From assembly GCF_001194135.2 (NCBI RefSeq), contig NC_068984.1, positions 16,413,963 through 16,477,962 of the forward strand: DNA of 64,000 nucleotides, in the 5' to 3' direction. Within the stretch, counting starts at the first letter, position 1. Each line of letters opens with the position of its first letter. Of the stretch, positions 26,625-61,154 are shown one piece after another. Source of the DNA: Octopus bimaculoides (Eukaryota). Under the pieces are notes generated by a model. That model was given only the letters and a program-made list of their open reading frames with translations. It made no database searches and was not told the DNA's origin. A program made the position numbers and the translations under genes.

Positions 26625-26744
26625 CGTAGCTGGTAGTAATATCATTATTAAAAGAACATCTCAAAATTTGAATACTTTTTTAGTGTATTTATCCAATACG
26701 AAATATTTTAAGGTCCACCAAATCGTTCAAGAAATCTTTTAATA

Positions 26745-29101: not shown

Positions 29102-29177
29102 GGCGTAGGAATGGCTCTGTGGTAAGTAGCTTGCTTACCAACCACATGGTTCTGAGTTCAGTCCCACTGCGTGGCAC
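29102..29177 (+). mobile_element. SINE family B head, truncated and fused to an LTR
   Basis: GGCGTAGGAATGGCTCTGTGG...CCCACTGCGTGGCAC, then an abrupt switch to LTR sequence. Confidence 0.85.
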
Positions 29178-30294
29178 GAACTCAAAAAGGAGAAATGGTG
29201 ACGAATGGAAAAACAGAGGACTCCTTTTATTTAAACGCGTCGCACGGTCGAACACAAAATAATATATCAAATATGATATACGTGATATGTTATACGACGA
29301 TAACATAGATGACCAGTAATGAAAGACCACAACCGTATTAGATGAATAACAGAGATATTTATTGTAGCGTTAAAGATGTATGTCTGTGTGAGAGTGTGAA
29401 TGCGACATATAATAACATAATCAAAGACAGGCCGTCATACAAAGAAAAGTATGTATATGAGTGATACATGTATGTGTATGTGTATTATTACAGCAGATAG
29501 AAAGNNNNNNNNNNNNNNNNNNNNNNNNNNNNNNNNNNNNNNNNNNNNNNNNNNNNNNNNNNNNNNNNNNNNNNNNNNNNNNNNNNNNNNNNNNNNNNNN
29601 NNNNNNNNNNNNNNNNNNNNNNNNNNNNNNNNNNNNNNNNNNNNNNNNNNNNNNNNNNNNNNNNNNNNNNNNNNNNNNNNNNNNNNNNNNNNNNNNNNNN
29701 NNNNNNNNNNNNNNNNNNNNNNNNNNNNNNNNNNNNNNNNNNNNNNNNNNNNNNNNNNNNNNNNNNNNNNNNNNNNNNNNNNNNNNNNNNNNNNNNNNNN
29801 NNNNNNNNNNNNNNNNNNNNNNNNNNNNNNNNNNNNNNNNNNNNNNNNNNNNNNNNNNNNNNNNNNNNNNNNNNNNNNNNNNNNNNNNNNNNNNNNNNNN
29901 NNNNNNNNNNNNNNNNNNNNNNNNNNNNNNNNNNNNNNNNNNNNNNNNNNNNNNNNNNNNNNNNNNNNNNNNNNNNNNNNNNNNNNGACAAATTTGTTGG
30001 GTATGAGTTGATCTATTTATAGCGTTAAGGGGGCTCACCAGATATCAGAAATATACTCTATCGCGTGACCTTATTAAGGGCTGTGATTGGTCAGTTTGCG
30101 TTCTGGCGGGAACGGTTCGAAGAAGTTGCCGATTCGAATAATGATCAGTCACCTGATGACAAGGAATGGGTTCTCTACTACGCTCGCATTTATTTATATT
30201 TAAATGAGAAGATTGTATGTAATGGCGATAGTAGTTGTGTATCTAATGGCGATAGGTAGTTTTGTATCTAGTGACGATAGGTAGTTTCACTACA
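29178..30294 (-). mobile_element. LTR copy A (Ty3/Gypsy-like), 3' LTR of a TRIM-like pair; contains an N gap and lacks about 20 bp of the U5 end
   Basis: Reverse complement of 53771-54861; on the minus strand it begins TGTAGTGAAACTACC at 30294. Confidence 0.88.
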
Positions 30295-30470
30295 CTAGCC
30301 TCGCACCAGTCGGTTTGTCGAAGGCAAAGAGACGAAATAAGAAAAAAAAATTGGAGTGAAAAAGACTTAAAGAACGGTTGGTCTATTACTGGCATTTAGT
30401 TACCATTTTTAAGTGAAACTGTGTGAACAGGATCACATAGGCTATACAGATCAGAAAGGCTGTATGAACG

Positions 30471-30491
30471 AATCAACGTCGGCGGTCACCA
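30471..30491 (-). promoter_or_regulatory. Primer-binding site complementary to tRNA-Trp
   Basis: Minus TGGTGACCGCCGACGTTGATT, 2 nt after the LTR end ...CCTTACA. The known tRNA-Trp PBS is TGGTGACCCCGACGTGAT. Confidence 0.85.
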
Positions 30492-30493
30492 AT

Positions 30494-30685
30494 TGTAAGG
30501 TACGACCGTGCGAACTCATAAAAGGAGAAATGTTGACGGATGGAAAAACAGAGGACTCCTTTTATTTAAACGCGTCACACGTTCGAACACACAATAATAT
30601 ATCAATGATGATATATTTGATATGTTATGCGACGATAACATAGATGACCAGTAATGAAAGACCACAACTGTATTAGATGAATAAC
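30494..30685 (-). mobile_element. LTR copy B (3' 192 bp of a 5' LTR)
   Basis: Homologous to the ends of copies A, C and D; ends CGTACCTTACA on the minus strand, directly before the PBS. Confidence 0.88.
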
Positions 30686-31246: not shown

Positions 31247-31411
31247 GGTTTCAAATTTTGGCACAAGGCCAAAAGTTATGAGGAAATGGTCAGTCAATGA
31301 CATAGGTTCTAGTGAACACCAGGTATTTGTTTTATTGACCCTGGAAAGATAAAAAGCATAGTAGACTTCGGTGGAATTCGAACTCAGAATGTAAAGTCGG
31401 AAGAAACGCCA
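31247..31411 (-). mobile_element. SINE family A, truncated by the mariner remnant
   Basis: Core GACTTCGGTGGAATTCGAACTCAGAATG. Confidence 0.75.
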
Positions 31412-31882
31412 CTGATCAGGCGTCAAAAGTCATGGCACCCACCGAATGGAAGGAGACCTTTGACATGCTAAGTTCGTTATGCAGAATGTTCTCAACTCGT
31501 TCACGGGCGATGCCTAAAGCATTAGCTATCTGATTAACATTTAAACGTCTGTCATCCATCACCATGTGGTGAACACGGTCGATGTTTTCTTGAGTGGTGG
31601 CTATGGCAAGACGTCCGAACCTTGGGTCATTTTCGAGATTTCCCTACTCCTCTTGAATTCAGCTGCCCACTTTTGCACAGTTGATAAAACTGGAGCACCA
31701 TCCCCTAATGTAGCAACCATATCAGCAAGAATATCCTTGAGGGGGGGTAACCCCTTTTTCTGCAGATATTTGATAACTCCAGGGTGCCAGATTTTATCCA
31801 TTTTCACGAAATGTCTCTAGTACCACTTTTCCAAGTCCTCAATTCTGTATCCGATGTGGATTTATCTGGAAAGAAAGAAATG
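31412..31882 (-). pseudogene. Mariner transposase N-terminal remnant with frameshifts
   Basis: MDKIWHPGVIKYLQKKG...LGDGAPVLSTVQKWAAEFKR, then (frameshift) LENDPRFGR...DDRRLNVNQIANALGI...ILHNELSMSKVS, then (frameshift) RWVP*LLTPDQ. These are the mariner HTH and WVPxxL motifs. Confidence 0.9.
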
Positions 31883-52641: not shown

Positions 52642-53046
52642 GATTCATATTATTGTGTACCCAAGAACTGGTATAAAATTGCTCACGTGTTATTGACTCT
52701 CTTTCTATCTGCTGTAATATTTCACATACACACACATGTATCACTCACATACATACTTTTCTTTGTATGACGGCCTGTCTTTGATTATGTTATTATATGT
52801 CGCATTCACACTCTCACACAGACATACATCTTTAACGCCATAATAAATATCTCTGTTATTCATCTAATACGGTTGTGGTCTTTCATTACTGGTCATCTAT
52901 GTTATCGTCGCATAACATATCAAATATATCATCATTGATATATTATTGTGTTTTCGACCGTGTGACGCGTTTAAATAAAAGGAGTCCTCTGTTTTTCCAT
53001 CCGTCACCATTTCTCCTTTTATGAGTTCGCACGGTCGTTCCTTACA
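52642..53046 (+). mobile_element. LTR copy C (5' part in the gap)
   Basis: Homologous to copy D; ends CGTTCCTTACA; no PBS follows. Confidence 0.88.
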
Positions 53047-53358
53047 TATATATATGAAAATGACTGTTTTTTAAACAACGCACACATCTAAGTCTGTCGT
53101 AGGTCGACCAACACGTTGAAACGTAACTCCCATTTTGGAAAATTTCCCCCTGATGAAATATTCAATTAATCAGTTTCAATATGAAATTTCAAATTGAATT
53201 AATTTTATTTAACTTCTGTAATTGAACTAACTGGATATGGAAACGGCTGTAGGACAAGAATTTCATTATATGGATTTGAATATCTTTGAATAAATTGATG
53301 TCTGCATGTCAATTTCTCCATTTTCTTCCTTTTCTCATTCATAAATATTTTAAATACC

Positions 53359-53770: not shown

Positions 53771-54861
53771 TGTAGTGAAACTACCTCCCGCCATTAGATA
53801 CAAACTACTATCGCCATTACATACAATCTTCTCATTTAAATATAAATAAATGCGAGCGTAGTAGAGAACCCATTCCTTGTCATCACGTGACTGATTATTA
53901 TTCGAATCGGCAACTTCTTCGAACCGTTCCCGCCAGGACGCAAACTGACCAATCACAGCCCTTAATAAGGTCACGTGATAGAGTATATTTCTGATATCTG
54001 GTGAGCCCCCTTAACGCTATAAATAGATCAACTCATACCCCACAAATTTGTCTCGGTCCAGTTTCTCTATAAAGACTGTTCCGTGTACCACACGACAGCA
54101 GCAGCAGTTCCAGCGACCACTTCAACAGCTTCGTCCAGCCAACGNNNNNNNNNNNNNNNNNNNNNNNNNNNNNNNNNNNNNNNNNNNNNNNNNNNNNNNN
54201 NNNNNNNNNNNNNNNNNNNNNNNNNNNNNNNNNNNNNNNNNNNNNNNNNNNNNNNNNNNNNNNNNNNNNNNNNNNNNNNNNNNNNNNNNNNNNNNNNNNN
54301 NNNNNNNNNNNNNNNNNNNNNNNNNNNNNNNNNNNNNNNNNNNNNNNNNNNNNNNNNNNNNNNNNNNNNNNNNNNNNNNNNNNNNNNNNNNNNNNNNNNN
54401 NNNNNNNNNNNNNNNNNNNNNNNNNNNNNNNNNNNNNNNNNNNNNNNNNNNNNNNNNNNNNNNNNNNNNNNNNNNNNNNNNNNNNNNNNNNNNNNNNNNN
54501 NNNNNNNNNNNNNNNNGACTCTCTTTCTCTCTGCTGTAATGACTCACACACATGTATCACTCACATACACACTTTTCTTTGTATGACGGCCTGTCTTTGA
54601 TTATGTTCTTATATGTCGCATTCACACTCTCACACAGACATACATCTTTAACGCTACAATAAATATCTCTGTTATTCATCTAATACGGTTGTGGTCTTTC
54701 ATTACTGGTCATCTATGTTATCGTCGCATAACATATCAAATATATCATCATTGATATATTATTTTGTGTTCGACCGTGTGACGCGTTTAAATAAAAGGAG
54801 TCCTCTGTTTTTCCATTCGTCACCATTTCTCCTTTTTGAGTTCGCACGGTCGTCCCTTAGA
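53771..54861 (+). mobile_element. Solo LTR copy D (Ty3/Gypsy-like)
   Basis: Starts TGTAGTG and ends CCTTAGA (TTACA in the sister copies). 4-bp TSD GTCT at 53767-53770 and 54862-54865; AATAAA at 54790-54795. Confidence 0.9.
53949..54023 (+). promoter_or_regulatory. LTR U3 pol II promoter motifs
   Basis: CCAAT at 53949-53953, E-box CACGTG at 53972-53977, TATAAA at 54018-54023. These are motifs only; activity is untested. Confidence 0.55.
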
Positions 54862-55724: not shown

Positions 55725-55956
55725 TCAGTTTCCTTATTGCCCACAAGGGGCTAAACATAGAGAGGACAAACAAGGACAGACAAAGGGATTAAGTCGATTA
55801 CATCTATCCAGTGCGTAACTGGTACTTAATTTATCGAATCTGAACGGATAAAAGGCAAAGTCAACCTCGGCGGAATTTGAACTCAGAACGTAGCGGCAAA
55901 CGAAATGCCGCTAAGCATTTCGCCCGGCGTGCTAACGTTTCTGCCATCTCTCCGCC
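55725..55956 (-). mobile_element. SINE family A with L1/Tx1-like tail
   Basis: Near-identical in structure to 14664-14891. Confidence 0.88.
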
Positions 55957-56217
55957 TTTCAGTTTCTGTCTAGCAAATCTACAGGTAATACTCTGATCAG
56001 CCCAGGCCATAATAGAAGACACCTGCACAAAGTGCCACGCAGGGGGACTGAATCCCGAACTGTGGTTGGAAAGCAAGCAAGGAAGAAATCAGTGTTTGAA
56101 ATAACTATGCGTTTTTAAAAGCTAAAAGTTTTAAGAATTTTAACCAATCAGAACTCTCCATCATCAACATACTGGAAATTACGACTGCTATATTTTGATT
56201 TACGTATTATTAATTCC

Positions 56218-56960
56218 TCAAAATAATAATGATTTCAAATTTTGGCTCAGGGCCAGATATTTCGTAGGTGAGTCGATTACGTTAACCCAATGTTCAACTG
56301 GTATTTATCTTATTTCTTTACTGCCCACAAGGGGCTACACACAGAGGGGGAAAACAAGGACAGACAACCGGATTAAGTCGATTATATCAACCCCAATGCG
56401 TAACTGGTACTTATTTAATCGACCCCGAAAGGATCAAAGGCAAAGTCGACCTCGGCGGAATTTGAACTCAGAACGTAGCGGCAGACGGAATACTGCTAAG
56501 CATTTCGCCCGGCGTGCTAACGTTTCTGCCAGCTCGCCGCCTTAGCTGGTATTTATCGTATCGACTCCGAAAAGATGAAAGGCAAAGTCGACCTCGGTGG
56601 AATTTGAACTCAACGTAAAGACGGCCGAAATACCGCTAAGTATTTTTCCTGGTCTGCTAACGATACTGCCAGCATGCAGTCTTAATAATAATCTTTTCTT
56701 CTATAGGTACAAGGCTTGAAATTTCAGGGGAGAGAGTGAGTCAATTGCCTCGACCCCAGTGCATAAGTGGTACTTATTTAATCGCCCCCGTTGCCACTAG
56801 ACATTTCGTCCGGCGTGCTAACAATTCTGCCAGCACGCCGCCTTAATTACTACTAATAATAATAATCCTTTCTATTATAGGCACACGGCCTAGAATTTGC
56901 GAGAAGGGAGATAATCGAGACTACATGGACCCTAATACTTGACTGGTTCTTAATTTATGG
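56218..56960 (-). mobile_element. Head-to-tail cluster of 4-5 SINE family A copies
   Basis: Repeated core and head; the copy at 56310-56543 carries the L1/Tx1-like tail. Confidence 0.85.
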
Positions 56961-58329: not shown

Positions 58330-58450
58330 TACGGGGGTGGGCAAAAGTAGGTATACATTTACTTATTATGAGTGTAGTATTATTTTCATTTCTTTATTTC
58401 TTTTTATAATTCATTAAGCAACTGTGTACCTACTTTTGCCCACAGTTCTA
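58330..58450. mobile_element. Short Tc1/mariner-like MITE
   Basis: 17-bp perfect IR GTGGGCAAAAGTAGGTA at 58337-58353 and 58427-58443; TA at both outer ends. Confidence 0.75.
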
Positions 58451-58875
58451 GGTTCGTTCGCTCAGGCTACGCTGACTACACTCACCTTCCAACAAATTCC
58501 ATAGAGGATAGCATTTCCTTTTCTGCATTTTATGTTTCTTAGAAAAACTTGTAAAAAAAAAAATCGATGAGATTTGGTCAAAGAGGAAAGTATCTATCCT
58601 TAGTTCTTTCTACATAACTATACCCACCAAGCAGGAAAACCGTAAAGCCTGATCGATAGACCCTTCAATGTAAGCTATTTTCCCTTCACACAACCAGTTA
58701 TCTACTATCTTCGCAACTGTTTTCAGTTTTTATCATCACTTCTTTTCCGCCAGGTGTCGCAACAGGCAGTCTCTAGCAGTGGCGGCTCATGTATAGGAAC
58801 TGTGGAACTGCAGCACCCCCTATTTCGACTCGATATTATCAATAACATTCAATATAATAAGTCTTTTTTTTCTTT

Positions 58876-58966
58876 AATTCTTTCTTTATACTTGTACATT
58901 ATATAATTCTTTCTTTATACTTGTACATTATATAATTCTTCCTTTATACTTGTACATTATATAATT
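58876..58966. repeat. 29-bp tandem repeat x3
   Basis: AATTCTTTCTTTATACTTGTACATTATAT at 58876, 58905 and 58934. Confidence 0.95.
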
Positions 58967-59250
58967 GTAACGGTTGAGATTACCAGTTGTAAGCGATAAA
59001 AGATTTGTTTTTGTAGCGATGCCTGTTATGGTGCAACGTCGGGATCGCCAGTTTGTAACGGTTGGTTCTTGGGAAGGCTGCAATTCTCTTGTTCGGGGTC
59101 ACCAATTGTAAGCGGTTAAGTTTTTAGTTGAAGTCGAGGGTCACCAGTTGTAACGGTTAGGTTTTCATTAATGTAGTTACCAATTGTAACGGGTAAGATT
59201 GATTAGGTACACAATATTATGAAATGTCGGAGTCAGCAGTCGTAACGATA
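58963..59250 (-). repeat. Array of about 7 LTR-end/tRNA-Trp PBS junction motifs with variable spacers
   Basis: Minus consensus CCG(C)TTACA-AY-TGGTGACCCCGAC. Plus-strand CCA-equivalent positions end at 58985, 59050, 59104, 59146, 59182 and 59238. Confidence 0.8.
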
Positions 59251-59449
59251 AAAATTTGTTGTTACAACGGCATGTTGTAGGATGTGAAAGATGAACAATG
59301 CATGAAGTTTTGAGGAAATATTTATTTACCGTTACGTTACAATACCTTGCGTCGACGGGCAGGTTATAAATCCAAAAGCATGCGAAGTAAAGTTTGTGTT
59401 TGTGTTCTCTTCATTGTTTAGTAGTAATTACACAGAGAGATAGAATGAT

Positions 59450-59550
59450 ACATTATTTACACTATTTACATTATTTACATTCGACGGATATTTGTCCTCA
59501 TCTTGTTTGTTGCCCGTGGGCCGAGTTCGATTCCAAGTAGTGACCTGAAC

Positions 59551-59599
<49 letters not shown>

Positions 59600-59770
59600 T
59601 CGAAAAATACCTTAGAAATGAGAACCCAGGTTCGAAATTTCCCCAAGACACCTGAAGAAGGCTGGAGGCTGTATCAGCCGAAACGTTGTGTTAACAACAA
59701 ACAAGATGAGGACAAACATCCGTCAAATGTAAATAATGTACTTAACTCTTCATCTCTCGAATATAGAACC
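59450..59770 (+). mobile_element. Penelope-like mini-insertion (pLTR plus inverted partial pLTR)
   Basis: 13-bp TSD GAGATAGAATGAT at 59437-59449 and 59771-59783. Inverted arms at 59467-59512 and 59695-59740 (44/46). Contains the hammerhead motif. Confidence 0.88.
59647..59692 (+). ncRNA. Minimal type I hammerhead ribozyme (Penelope-type)
   Basis: GACAC-CTGAAGA-A-GGCTG-(10 nt)-CAGCC-GAA-ACGT-T-GTGTT. Stems I and II pair, stem III is the ACGU palindrome, and the predicted cleavage site is GUU after 59687. Confidence 0.85.
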
Positions 59771-61154
59771 GAGATAGAATGATGTTGCAAGAGAACAGGA
59801 TTAGAGCTAGTGAGAGTTGTAGGGTTGTGGGACGTTGCCTCACAGTTGCTGGCAGTAAACTTCATTTCTCCCTCTGACCAAGGTTCTAGCTGGTCAGCCA
59901 GACTTCGTTCTCACTGAGTTGTCACCGAAGCGACTAACTCGTTGAGTCATCACCAAGTGACTGAACTATCTTTTTGCTTGGGGTTTATGCTTTTACAACT
60001 CTCCAGAAGGATAGACATATCGTTGAGAACAATGGGCTTCGTTGGTGATACTGTGATATCTCTATTCTAGCTTTTGGTGAAGTAGAAGAGGTTAGAAAGG
60101 GTTAAGTGGTGAAGACATTATTTCAACCTAGCAAAAGGCAGTCTGGCAAATGTAAAATTGTTGTCAGAGAAAAACCATTATTCCACTGTGAGAAAAGTTC
60201 TATTGAACTGTTAATTTAAATTTGGCTATGGTGGATCGAATCCACTTCATGCCTGCAAGATCCTACATAATCCTTAAGCTTAATGTCAGTAGCCTTCCCC
60301 TAGTTTATGAAAAAAATACAAAAATCCTTGTATAGAACAGTGCTCTTCACAGTTCAGCGGCGCAGTGTTTGGCTGTTATGCGCATGCTCACATGTCCGAG
60401 ATAGGAAGTTTCATGGTGGTGGTGGTGGTGGTGGTACTGCTGCTGGTGATGACACTGTTGCTGCTTTTAATTTCTTGCCATCATAGTGTGATGTCAATGT
60501 TGTACGAGACGTTGTCTTGGCAATGACGTCAAACTTTGTAGTTGCCATGGCCGTAACAATACTGACTGTAGTCAGGCCGAAAGTTTCAAATCTCTTCTCT
60601 CATTCTCTATCTATCTGTCTATCTATCTATTTATCTATTTATGTCTATCTCTCTCTCTGTATTGTCTGTATCTTATCTCTCATTTTCCTCCGCCGCGAAC
60701 ATTATAGTGGCATTCTTGGATCCATATTTAGCGAAAGTATTGCAGAAATACCCAACCTAAAAATTTGTCATTTTTCCCCAAATTTCATTTGAATTCTTCG
60801 GTTTTCAAAAACGAAGTTACGACTTTACAAAAAAAAAAAAAAAAAAAAAGAGAGAGAGAGAAGTAAAACAGCTTTTCAAAATTTTTAATTTCCTCACCAT
60901 ACACTTGAAATTTTATCTTTTTTTAATTTTTTGCTTTAATTTTACATTTGAATATACAGAGATTACGATCTTGAGAAAAAATAAAATTTGTTTCGAAATT
61001 TCAATTTTTTAAAAAATTAATAACACCTGGATTTCAGAAAAAACATATCCATCTCGATCCAAATCTTTTGGAAGTTTTAAAAATTGTCCGTTAATTGCAT
61101 GTGTACAGGACAACAACCATTAGCCAAATGCTCCCCAAAACAGACACAAACGTG

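What the first reader, a model, noticed from the sequence alone, without database searches (positions are those of the whole stretch)
58963..59250. CRISPR-like array of LTR-end + tRNA-Trp primer-binding-site junctions
Seen on the minus strand, in order: ATCGTTACG-AC-TGCTGACTCCGAC, CCCGTTACA-AT-TGGTAACT, ACCGTTACA-AC-TGGTGACCCTCGAC, ACCGCTTACA-AT-TGGTGACCCCGAA, ACCGTTACA-AAC-TGGCGATCCCGACGTTG, ATCGCTTACA-AC-TGGTAATC, and ACCGTTACA-AT. They are spaced 36-65 bp apart with mostly different intervening sequence. Established: TGGTGACCCCGACGTGAT is the tRNA-Trp PBS, and Gypsy 5' LTRs end ...TTACA a couple of nt before the PBS. The single junction at 30471-30500 in this window has the same form. An LTR element normally has one PBS, not about 7. 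On the plus strand each unit reads as a tRNA-Trp 3' end including CCA, followed by the first bases of minus-strand strong-stop DNA. Inference, three options: (a) serial amplification of the U5-PBS junction of a minus-strand LTR (an AATAAA lies 80 bp upstream at 59326-59321), perhaps acting as a multi-priming site or primer-tRNA decoy; (b) concatenated capture of primer-cDNA initiation products from several LTR families, a spacer-like record; (c) an old degenerate satellite. Some spacers are related (units 7/2 and 5/4), which favours duplication for at least part of the array.
Basis: partly seen in the sequence, partly recalled or inferred. Interest (0 to 1): 0.85.

Follow-up and report, generated by a model that had tools for sequence, protein, structure and literature searches.

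The report
Decayed tandem repeat of LTR-end/primer site
A 290-base stretch holds about eight worn, head-to-tail copies of the spot where a retrotransposon's terminal repeat meets its tRNA-Trp primer-binding site; it is an old transposon-derived minisatellite, not a CRISPR-like record, and is mildly unusual rather than important.

Summary
On the minus strand, 59270-58963 carries 7-8 copies of ~ACCG(Y)TTACA-AY-TGGTGACCCCGAC(GTTG), spaced 56/36/41/54/42/23/23 nt. This is far more than chance predicts. The core consensus matches the first 15 nt of the tRNA-Trp 3'-end complement. It is almost identical to a proven LTR-end/PBS junction in the same window (30500-30472).

The CRISPR-like reading is not supported. 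Units are homologous beyond the core, and the 36-42-nt units align end to end. The array has higher-order structure: U0-U1-U2 resembles U5b-U6-U7, AC and AT junction types alternate, and relaxed TRF finds periods of 36 and 96. Substitutions are mostly transitions. All of this fits one monomer (U5 tail + 2-3 nt + PBS) that was duplicated in tandem and then decayed.

A second, weaker copy of the upstream flank with about two units lies at 15489-15640. The first duplication therefore probably predates dispersal.

No LTR pair, coding remnant, tRNA gene, Rfam family or RNA structure accompanies the array. Only four units still pair well with tRNA-Trp in silico.

Best reading: a retrotransposon-derived short tandem array whose monomer happens to span U5/PBS. 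No octopus genome data could be reached, so its genome-wide copy structure is untested. Interest is low to moderate.

The parts
59226..59249 (-). Unit U1: ATCGTTACG-AC-TGCTGACTCCGAC. PBS-like sequence continues to about 59220 as ...ATTTCA.
   Evidence: Duplex with tRNA-Trp 3' end is -18.4 kcal/mol.
59175..59193 (-). Unit U2: CCCGTTACA-AT-TGGTAACT, with a degenerate PBS.
   Evidence: Duplex is -6.2 kcal/mol, within the random range. It shares the TGGTAACTACAT state with the E1 second motif and with locus B unit 2.
59133..59157 (-). Unit U3: ACCGTTACA-AC-TGGTGACCCTCGAC, with one inserted T.
   Evidence: Duplex is -24.2 kcal/mol.
59092..59116 (-). Unit U4: ACCGCTTACA-AT-TGGTGACCCCGAA.
   Evidence: Duplex is -24.7 kcal/mol.
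59034..59062 (-). Unit U5: ACCGTTACA-AAC-TGGCGATCCCGACGTTG.
   Evidence: Duplex is -24.8 kcal/mol.
58999..59020 (-). Unit U5b: degenerate, ATCGCTACA-AA-AACAAATCTTT, with no PBS.
   Evidence: It aligns with U0 in the block duplication.
58973..58997 (-). Unit U6: ATCGCTTACA-AC-TGGTAATCTCAAC. Its PBS differs from the consensus by four changes, all transitions.
58964..58974 (-). Unit U7: ACCGTTACA-AT, truncated. It runs straight into the 29-bp repeat.
59260..59270 (-). Unit U0: partial, CCGTTGTAACA(AC), upstream of U1.
   Evidence: U0-U1 aligns with U5b-U6 (score 24 against 9.7 +/- 1.8, 0/500 shuffles).
59271..59369 (-). Upstream flank, candidate U5 of a decayed LTR. AATAAA lies at 59326-59321.
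   Evidence: Homologous to the flank of locus B (score 22, empirical p=0.0023). No significant similarity to the U5 of the proven LTR family. No partner LTR found.
58870..58966 (-). Young 29-bp tandem repeat, about 3.3 copies at 95-98% identity, abutting the last unit.
15489..15640 (+). Locus B: a second, diverged copy of the upstream flank plus about two junction units (TATGGTGACGAC; CGTTACA-AG-TTGGTCAC).
   Evidence: p=0.0033; p=0.0023. nhmmer alone does not call it significant (E about 4.5-8).
30472..30500 (-). Proven LTR terminus (CCTTACA) + AT + tRNA-Trp-type PBS (TGGTGACCGCCGACGTTGAT) of a non-autonomous LTR element, E1.
   Evidence: Duplex is -28.8 kcal/mol.
30393..30414 (-). Possible second, degenerate junction copy in the E1 leader: CACTTAAAAATGGTAACTAAAT.
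   Evidence: 20/1000 shuffles; 43/2000 shuffles. The U5-tail-only test is not significant, so this is suggestive only.

Best explanation
The feature is an old, degenerate short tandem array (a minisatellite).

Anatomy:
- About eight units of 23-56 nt.
- Consensus monomer of about 40 nt: AAAACyTAACCGTTACA-AY-TGGTGACCCCGACGTTGmA.
- The monomer is the segment of an LTR retroelement that spans the last ~15-20 nt of U5, the 2-3-nt spacer and the tRNA-Trp primer-binding site.

What is shown:
- The core is an LTR-end/PBS(Trp) junction.
- The units descend from one another. Flanks are homologous, block U0-U1-U2 resembles block U5b-U6-U7, AC-type and AT-type units alternate, and periods of 36 and about 96 nt are detected.
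- Divergence is ordinary decay, biased to transitions and with indels.

What is inferred:
- A first duplication of the U5/PBS segment already existed in the ancestral mobile element. A second copy in the window (locus B) has about two units, and the same degenerate second-unit state (TGGTAACTAcAT) is seen in the array, in locus B and in the leader of the proven LTR element E1.
- The array at 59 kb then grew in place by unequal exchange or replication slippage. The young 29-bp repeat next to it did the same.
- It has been decaying since, and it has lost any recognisable partner LTR and coding region.
- The first duplication could have arisen during reverse transcription (an aberrant strand transfer around the PBS) or at the DNA level. 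The sequence cannot separate these two.
- No present function is indicated.
For: Core identity:
- The consensus TGGTGACCCCGACGT equals the first 15 nt of the tRNA-Trp 3'-end complement.
- The consensus monomer against the proven junction E1 gives 27 identities over 29 columns (one mismatch, one gap), z=12.1, 0/2000 shuffles.
- The LTR terminus is proven by a four-copy alignment.

Tandem descent:
- Self-similarity gives 206 window pairs against 41.6 +/- 12 in shuffles, with offsets 36, 42, 78, 92, 95 and 119.
- Conservation runs from about -13 to +12 around TACA.
- U0-U1-U2 against U5b-U6-U7 scores 24 against 9.7 +/- 1.8, 0/500 shuffles.
- Nearest neighbours are U1~U6, U2~U7, U3~U5 and U3~U4, with 16 transitions against 5 transversions.
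- Relaxed TRF finds period 36 x 2.8 copies (76% match) and period 96 x 2.7 copies.

Dispersed family:
- The flank-only comparison of the array with locus B gives p=0.0023.

Locus prone to tandem duplication:
- A 29-bp repeat of about 3.2 copies at 98% identity lies adjacent.

Literature:
- Short tandem arrays inside LTR retrotransposons are common.
- They have been hypothesised to arise by abnormal strand transfers.
- They can seed satellites (PMC7004042).
Against: - No LTR pair flanks the array (z=-0.4).
- The upstream flank is not detectably similar to the U5 of the proven LTR family.
- No coding remnant was found, although only the 10 longest open frames were scanned.
- The array therefore cannot be placed inside a defined element.
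- The homology to locus B is weak: nhmmer gives E about 4.5-8.
- The E1 second-motif evidence is marginal.
- The core is somewhat better conserved than the far ends of the longer units. That could also reflect constraint.
- No octopus genome, tRNA-Trp gene or orthologous locus could be reached.
Confidence: 0.7

Rival explanations
1. The multi-PBS leader is a heritable and useful trait of a family of non-autonomous LTR elements. It would be generated during reverse transcription by repeated aberrant strand transfer at the PBS. It would serve as redundant tRNA-Trp priming sites, or as a sponge or landing pad for primer tRNA, 3'-tRFs or pre-tRNA complexes.
For: - Three loci may share a second junction unit in the same degenerate state: the array's U2, locus B unit 2 and the E1 second motif.
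- Four units still pair with the tRNA-Trp 3' end more strongly than about 99% or more of random 22-mers from the window.
- PBS sites are known targets of 3'-tRFs (PMC7472051; 10.64898/2026.01.22.698655).
- PBS sites are also known targets of pre-tRNA/Puf68-guided H3K9 methylation (PMC13537249).
- Abnormal strand transfer has been proposed as the origin of tandem repeats inside LTR retrotransposons (PMC7004042).
Against: - Half of the units have lost pairing.
- Substitutions look neutral, with 16 transitions against 5 transversions, plus indels and microhomology deletions.
- No intact element, LTR pair or coding partner is present.
- The E1 duplication is only marginally supported.
- There is no RNA structure signal on either strand.
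- The single locus shows decay, not maintenance.
Confidence: 0.15
2. The array is a spacer-like record. Abortive tRNA-primed cDNA initiation products from several different LTR families would have been concatenated and captured.
For: Unit lengths vary (23-56 nt), and some inter-core stretches, in U1 and U4, are not obviously alignable.
Against: - Sequences 5' of each core are homologous to each other (AAAACyTAACCG).
- Whole blocks are duplicated.
- AC and AT unit types alternate, and TRF finds periods of 36 and 96 nt.
- The same degenerate unit recurs at locus B.
- No mechanism for such capture is known in animals.
Confidence: 0.02
3. The resemblance to a PBS is coincidental. The array would be an ordinary satellite or a fragment of the abundant tRNA-derived SINE of this genome.
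For: The SINE copies in the window contain TTCGGGGTC...ACCAGTT. With a 12-nt deletion this would resemble the plus-strand unit TCGGGGTCACCAGTTG.
Against: - The SINE continues ...ACCAGTTACGCACTGGGG and never runs into GTAACGGT.
- The array consensus matches a proven LTR/PBS junction in the same window with 27 identities over 29 columns (one mismatch, one gap).
- It also matches tRNA-Trp for 15 nt.
- ARAGORN and Rfam find nothing tRNA-like.
Confidence: 0.03
4. The array is an assembly artefact of a gap-rich short-read scaffold. Reads from many dispersed LTR/PBS junctions would have been collapsed or chained together.
For: The window has 16 N runs, totalling 4459 N.
Against: - No N lies inside or next to the array.
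- The units differ from one another by 10-35%, so they would not be collapsed or chained by an assembler.
- The internal block structure is coherent.
Confidence: 0.03

Closest known systems
Short tandem arrays inside LTR retrotransposon untranslated regions, such as the Tat/Ogre 3'UTR repeats that seed satellites (Macas 2009; Vondrak 2020, PMC7004042)
   Same: - Head-to-tail repeats of tens of nucleotides that lie within or derive from non-coding parts of an LTR element.
- The number of units varies between copies.
- The array can expand in place, and it shows higher-order structure.
- Aberrant strand transfer has been proposed as the origin.
   Different: - Here the monomer spans the U5 end and the primer-binding site itself, so the PBS is multiplied. 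The described cases lie in the 3'UTR or in the leader downstream of the PBS.
- The organism is an animal (a cephalopod-like genome), not a plant.
- Only a decayed fragment without its element is visible.
Canonical 5' LTR/PBS junction of tRNA-Trp-primed retroelements: ALV/RSV-type retroviruses, some insect Gypsy families such as Gypsy-32_NVi (PMC10886601), and element E1 at 30.5 kb in this window
   Same: The layout ...TTACA, then 2-3 nt, then TGGTGACCCCGAC..., complementary to the tRNA-Trp 3' end including CCA.
   Different: - A normal element has one junction. This locus has 7-8.
- Most are mutated.
- There is no partner LTR, PPT-LTR or gag/pol.
CRISPR array
   Same: Only the visual pattern of a short conserved motif alternating with less conserved stretches of tens of nucleotides.
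   Different: - The repeats are 62-92% alike rather than near-identical.
- The 'spacers' are homologous to each other.
- Unit length varies 2.4-fold.
- The context is a eukaryotic non-coding region rich in SINEs and microsatellites.
- No cas genes or leader are present.
PBS-derived 3'-tRF target sites in LTR-derived transcripts (Schorn laboratory; PMC7472051, 10.64898/2026.01.22.698655)
   Same: Sequences complementary to the 3' end of a mature tRNA, left behind by an LTR element.
   Different: - Those are single sites with demonstrated repression in mouse cells.
- Here there is an array of partly decayed sites, with no expression or small-RNA data.

Membership tests
LTR retroelement 5' LTR/PBS junction (sequence origin) | [quoted passage not shown] | tested here: met
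   - The consensus ...ACCGTTACA-AY-TGGTGACCCCGACGT equals the tRNA-Trp complement for 15 nt.
- It matches the proven junction E1 with 27 identities over 29 columns (one mismatch, one gap).
- The host tRNA-Trp gene itself could not be retrieved.
Complete LTR retrotransposon (the array as part of a definable element) | Two direct LTRs flanking the internal region. | tested here: not met
   - Self-BLAST of 57.5-61.5 kb finds no direct repeat pair.
- Sensitive local alignment of the upstream flank against the downstream 1.9 kb gives z=-0.4.
Complete LTR retrotransposon (the array as part of a definable element) | gag/pol coding sequence or remnants of it. | tested here: inconclusive
   - The region is dense in stop codons in all six frames.
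- The 10 longest open frames of the window have no Pfam hit.
- Short remnants were not scanned exhaustively.
Ty3/Gypsy superfamily | RT-RNaseH-integrase domain order and RT phylogeny. | not testable with these tools
   No coding sequence is linked to the array or to element E1, and no octopus repeat library was available.
TE-derived minisatellite / short tandem array | Head-to-tail units that descend from a common monomer. | tested here: met
   - Offsets of 36, 42, 78, 92 and 95 nt.
- TRF period 36 (76% match) and period 96 at relaxed settings.
- A block duplication.
- Default TRF thresholds miss the array.
TE-derived minisatellite / short tandem array | The monomer sequence is found in a dispersed repeat family. 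| tested here: inconclusive
   - One further copy of the flank plus about two units lies at 15489-15640 (p=0.0023), but nhmmer gives E about 4.5-8.
- The junction is shared with the E1 family.
- A genome-wide census was not possible.
CRISPR array | Near-identical direct repeats separated by unrelated, similarly sized spacers, with cas genes nearby. | tested here: not met
   - Units are 62-92% alike.
- Spacers are homologous to each other.
- Spacing ranges from 23 to 56 nt.
- No protein domains were found.
tRNA gene or tRNA-derived SINE | Cloverleaf structure or A/B-box head. | tested here: not met
   - ARAGORN finds 0 genes.
- Rfam finds nothing relevant.
- The SINE copies of the window do not contain the core.

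The most novel reading that the evidence does not exclude
A lineage of small non-autonomous LTR elements in this cephalopod genome carries and transmits a tandemly multiplied U5-end/PBS module. The module would be created by repeated aberrant strand transfer at the tRNA-Trp primer site. It would serve as redundant priming sites, or as a multivalent sink or landing pad for tRNA-Trp, its 3' fragments or pre-tRNA silencing complexes. The 59-kb array would then be a decayed example of a functional architecture that has not been described for LTR elements.
Probability: 0.08. Interest if true: 0.6.

Novelty: new variant of a known kind. Interest (0 to 1): 0.25.

Why it matters
If it is only what it appears to be, it adds a small curiosity: a transposon-derived minisatellite whose repeat unit is the primer-binding junction itself. 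It also shows that a visually CRISPR-like pattern in a eukaryotic genome can be ordinary tandem-repeat decay.

It would matter more if genome-wide data showed that young copies of the family carry several intact tRNA-Trp sites. That would bear on how reverse transcription is primed, and on how 3'-tRF or pre-tRNA-guided silencing recognises LTR elements.

Tried and rejected
- **Public DNA collections.** I scanned viral contigs twice and metagenome contigs twice for the junction motif. The only hit, L001, is a GC-rich bacterial coding region and a chance match. No eukaryotic genome collection was available.
- **Protein database.** I searched it with a composite of all open frames across the E1 junction, hoping to reach octopus contigs through spurious ORFs. 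It gave no hits.
- **Rfam** on 57.5-60.5 kb returned only a meaningless CrcZ match at E=0.67.
- **Pfam** on the 10 longest open frames returned nothing.
- **SINE origin.** It was considered because of the shared TTCGGGGTC...ACCAGTT. It was rejected because the SINE never continues into GTAACGGT.
- **Partner LTR.** I looked for one around the array and found none.
- **Homology of the array's upstream flank to the U5 of the proven LTR family** was not significant.
- **A third copy at 20198.** It is not supported against the array, although locus B and that region share another repeat.
- **Homology of the array's 3' end and the 29-bp repeat to locus B** was not significant.
- **Gapless PWM scan.** It was overfitted and uninformative.
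- **Literature searches for described multi-PBS arrays** found none, and the searches were noisy.
- **RNA folding of either strand** showed no excess stability.

Full report
**1. The observation**

| Unit | Sequence | Coordinates |
|---|---|---|
| U1 | ATCGTTACG-AC-TGCTGACTCCGAC | 59249-59226 |
| U2 | CCCGTTACA-AT-TGGTAACT | 59193-59175 |
| U3 | ACCGTTACA-AC-TGGTGACCCTCGAC | 59157-59133 |
| U4 | ACCGCTTACA-AT-TGGTGACCCCGAA | 59116-59092 |
| U5 | ACCGTTACA-AAC-TGGCGATCCCGACGTTG | 59062-59034 |
| U6 | ATCGCTTACA-AC-TGGTAATCTCAAC | 58997-58973 |
| U7 | ACCGTTACA-AT | 58974-58964 |

I add two degenerate units:
- U0, CCGTTGTAACA, at 59270-59260.
- U5b, ATCGCTACA-AA-..., at 59020-58999.

Core-to-core spacing is 56, 36, 41, 54, 42, 23 and 23 nt.

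The pattern is far beyond chance:
- All four exact CCGTTACA in the window lie in the array.
- The 16-nt junction pattern gives 7 hits against 1.55 expected.
- TGGTGACCCCGAC with up to 2 mismatches gives 4 hits against 0.39 expected, three of them in the array.
- Self-similarity of the region is 206 matching 12-nt windows against 41.6 +/- 12 in shuffles.
- The repeat finder independently reports the family.
- No assembly gap touches the array.

**2. What the core is**

The 18-mer TGGTGACCCCGACGTGAT is the reverse complement of the 3' end of human tRNA-Trp with CCA (10.1101/400127). The same 18-mer is used as the PBS primer for chicken EAV/ALV proviruses (PMC5029493). The array consensus TGGTGACCCCGACGT matches its first 15 nt.

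The window itself supplies a control. An LTR family has four copies:
- 29177-~30268, crossing a gap.
- 30494-30685.
- 52701-53048.
- 54517-54860.

Aligning the four ends shows that all terminate ...GTCGTnCCTTACA. After that, three copies diverge into unrelated flanks. The copy at 30.5 kb (E1) continues AT-TGGTGACCGCCGACGTTGAT. So 30500-30472 is a true LTR-end/PBS junction.

The array's consensus monomer aligns to it with 27 identities over 29 columns (one mismatch, one gap) (z=12.1, 0/2000 shuffles). This includes the ACC before TTACA and the GTTG after GAC. The core is therefore LTR/PBS-derived. It is not a coincidence, and it is not a piece of the window's abundant tRNA-derived SINE. That SINE shares TTCGGGGTC...ACCAGTT but continues differently.

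**3. How the units relate**

Anchoring all units on TACA shows conservation from about -13 to +12 (AAAt.TtAaCCGT TACA AyTGGTgAC.cC). In U1, U3 and U5 the PBS-like stretch runs about 19 nt (CCGACATTTCA / CGAC-TTCAA / CCGACGTTGCA). The 36-42-nt units are thus homologous from end to end. The longer units carry extra material.

Several results point to tandem descent:
- The block U0-U1(-U2) aligns with U5b-U6-U7 (score 24 against 9.7 +/- 1.8, 0/500 shuffles).
- Nearest neighbours are U1~U6, U2~U7, U3~U5 and U3~U4.
- The junction dinucleotide alternates: AC, AT, AC, AT, (A)AC, ..., AC, AT.
- With relaxed penalties TRF finds period 36 x 2.8 copies (59200-59093, 76% matches) and period 96 x 2.7 copies (59264-59011). 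Default thresholds miss it.
- Differences from the core consensus are 16 transitions against 5 transversions. The U6 PBS differs from the consensus by four changes, all transitions.

This is the signature of one monomer duplicated in tandem, partly as dimers and blocks, and then decaying neutrally. It argues against independent capture of products from different LTR families.

**4. Context**

- No tRNA gene is present and no Rfam family matches.
- Neither strand shows excess RNA structure (z=+1.1 and +0.5).
- The neighbourhood is full of stop codons in all frames.
- The 10 longest open frames of the window have no Pfam domain.
- No partner LTR exists within the window (z=-0.4).
- The upstream flank is not detectably similar to the U5 of the proven LTR family.
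- The AATAAA 80 nt upstream is weak evidence, since the hexamer occurs 149 times in the window.
- Directly downstream lies a young 29-bp repeat of about 3.2 copies at 98% identity. The locus is therefore prone to tandem duplication.

**5. A second copy**

The single PBS-like hit outside the array and E1 (15598-15610, + strand) sits in this sequence:

...ATATTTTTATGGTGACGAC-GACCTACA-CGTTACA-AG-TTGGTCAC...

Its upstream flank, with the motif excluded, is homologous to the flank upstream of the array (score 22; empirical p=0.0023 against 3000 random window pieces). The 71-nt piece around the motif aligns to U0-U1 (p=0.0033). nhmmer alone does not call this significant (E about 4.5-8), so it is a moderately supported relative.

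This 'locus B' has only about two units. Its second unit (TGGTCACTTTCT), the array's U2 (TGGTAACTACAT) and a second junction-like motif in the leader of E1 (TGGTAACTAAAT, 30414-30393) share the same departures from the PBS.

The statistics for E1's own duplication are marginal:
- 20/1000 shuffles reach the observed score.
- 43/2000 shuffles reach it.
- The U5-tail-only test is not significant.

Together these suggest, but do not prove, that a first duplication of the junction was already present in the ancestral element. On that reading the 59-kb copy expanded later.

**6. Could the units still work?**

Predicted duplex energies with the 18-nt 3' end of tRNA-Trp:

| Target | Energy (kcal/mol) |
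|---|---|
| Perfect PBS | -36.3 |
| E1 | -28.8 |
| U3, U4, U5 | -24.2 to -24.8 |
| U1 | -18.4 |
| U2 | -6.2 |
| U6 | -9.7 |
| U5b | -2.7 |
| U7 | -1.4 |
| Random 22-mers from the window | -6.3 +/- 3.4 (minimum -21.4) |

Four units keep substantial complementarity and four do not. That is what decay predicts, and it is not what a maintained multi-site device predicts.

**7. Mechanism**

Most likely (confidence about 0.7), a segment comprising the U5 tail, the 2-3-nt spacer and the PBS of a tRNA-Trp-primed LTR element was duplicated. The resulting short array then grew by unequal exchange or slippage and has since degenerated, and the rest of the element has been lost or is unrecognisable.

The initiating duplication may have happened during reverse transcription, through aberrant strand transfer at the PBS. 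That idea has been raised for tandem repeats inside LTR elements (PMC7004042). It may equally have happened at the DNA level. The sequence cannot decide between them.

Rivals:
- A transmitted, functional multi-PBS leader: 0.15.
- Capture of independent cDNA starts: 0.02.
- Coincidental satellite or SINE fragment: 0.03.
- Misassembly: 0.03.

**8. Comparison with the known, and novelty**

Short tandem arrays in non-coding parts of LTR retrotransposons are well known, and so are satellites derived from them (PMC7004042). I did not find a description of an array whose monomer is the U5/PBS junction itself. Those searches were limited and noisy.

I therefore file this as a new variant of a known kind. 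It is not a CRISPR-like system: the repeats are only 62-92% alike, the spacers are related to each other, and the setting is eukaryotic non-coding DNA. The Gypsy assignment is untestable here.

**9. Limits**

None of the collections I could reach holds cephalopod DNA. The viral and metagenome scans gave one chance bacterial hit, and the protein-database detour gave nothing. The following remain untested:
- The genome-wide structure of the family.
- The host tRNA-Trp sequence.
- Orthologous loci.
- Expression.
- Long-read support.

**10. Verdict**

Interest is 0.25.

Noticed in passing
window 59437-59783: A pair of 46-nt inverted repeats (59467-59512 and 59695-59740, 96% complementary) encloses B-box-like SINE fragments and an (AAT)16 microsatellite. 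The whole is flanked by a 13-nt direct repeat, ATCATTCTATCTC (59449-59437 and 59783-59771). It looks like a target-site duplication of an insertion about 200 nt upstream of the array.
   Followed up: partly
window 29177-30685, 52701-53048, 53772-54860: An LTR family with four copies. Its U3 carries CCAAT and TATAAATA boxes (about 53950-54025), and AATAAA lies 67 nt before the ...CCTTACA terminus. Element E1 consists of a truncated 5' LTR (192 bp), a tRNA-Trp PBS, only about 220 nt of internal sequence, and a 3' LTR of about 1.1 kb that crosses a gap. It is therefore a non-autonomous LTR element.
   Followed up: partly
window 798-1320, 13139-13480, 14731-14909, 18699-18768, 26458-26636, 31249-31418, 55792-55970, 56377-56695: About twelve copies of a tRNA-derived SINE (head GGCGAGCTGGCAGAA..., B box GAGTTCAAATTCCGCC). 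Several are in tandem or nested pairs.
   Followed up: no
window 58870-58966: A young 29-bp tandem repeat (TATATAATGTACAAGTATAAAGRAAGAAT, about 3.3 copies, 95-98% identity) starts exactly after the AT of the last junction unit.
   Followed up: partly
window 15706-15897 and 20537-20727; 15624-15700 and 20231-20304: Locus B and a region near 20.2-20.7 kb share another dispersed repeat (64% identity over 197 nt, E=7e-13; nhmmer E=0.036). A junction-like CCGCTTACAGATTGTAT lies at 20196-20213, but similarity of that region to the array is not significant.
   Followed up: partly
window 58337-58443: An imperfect hairpin with 29-nt arms (90% complementary) and a 49-nt loop.
   Followed up: no
window 5399-6399: A tandem repeat with a 50-nt period on both sides of a 100-N gap.
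   Followed up: no
whole window: The window contains 16 runs of N (4459 N, about 7%) and very many micro- and minisatellites (ACAT, AGAT, AC, CT, AT). This indicates a gap-rich short-read scaffold, so repeat copy numbers near the gaps are unreliable.
   Followed up: no
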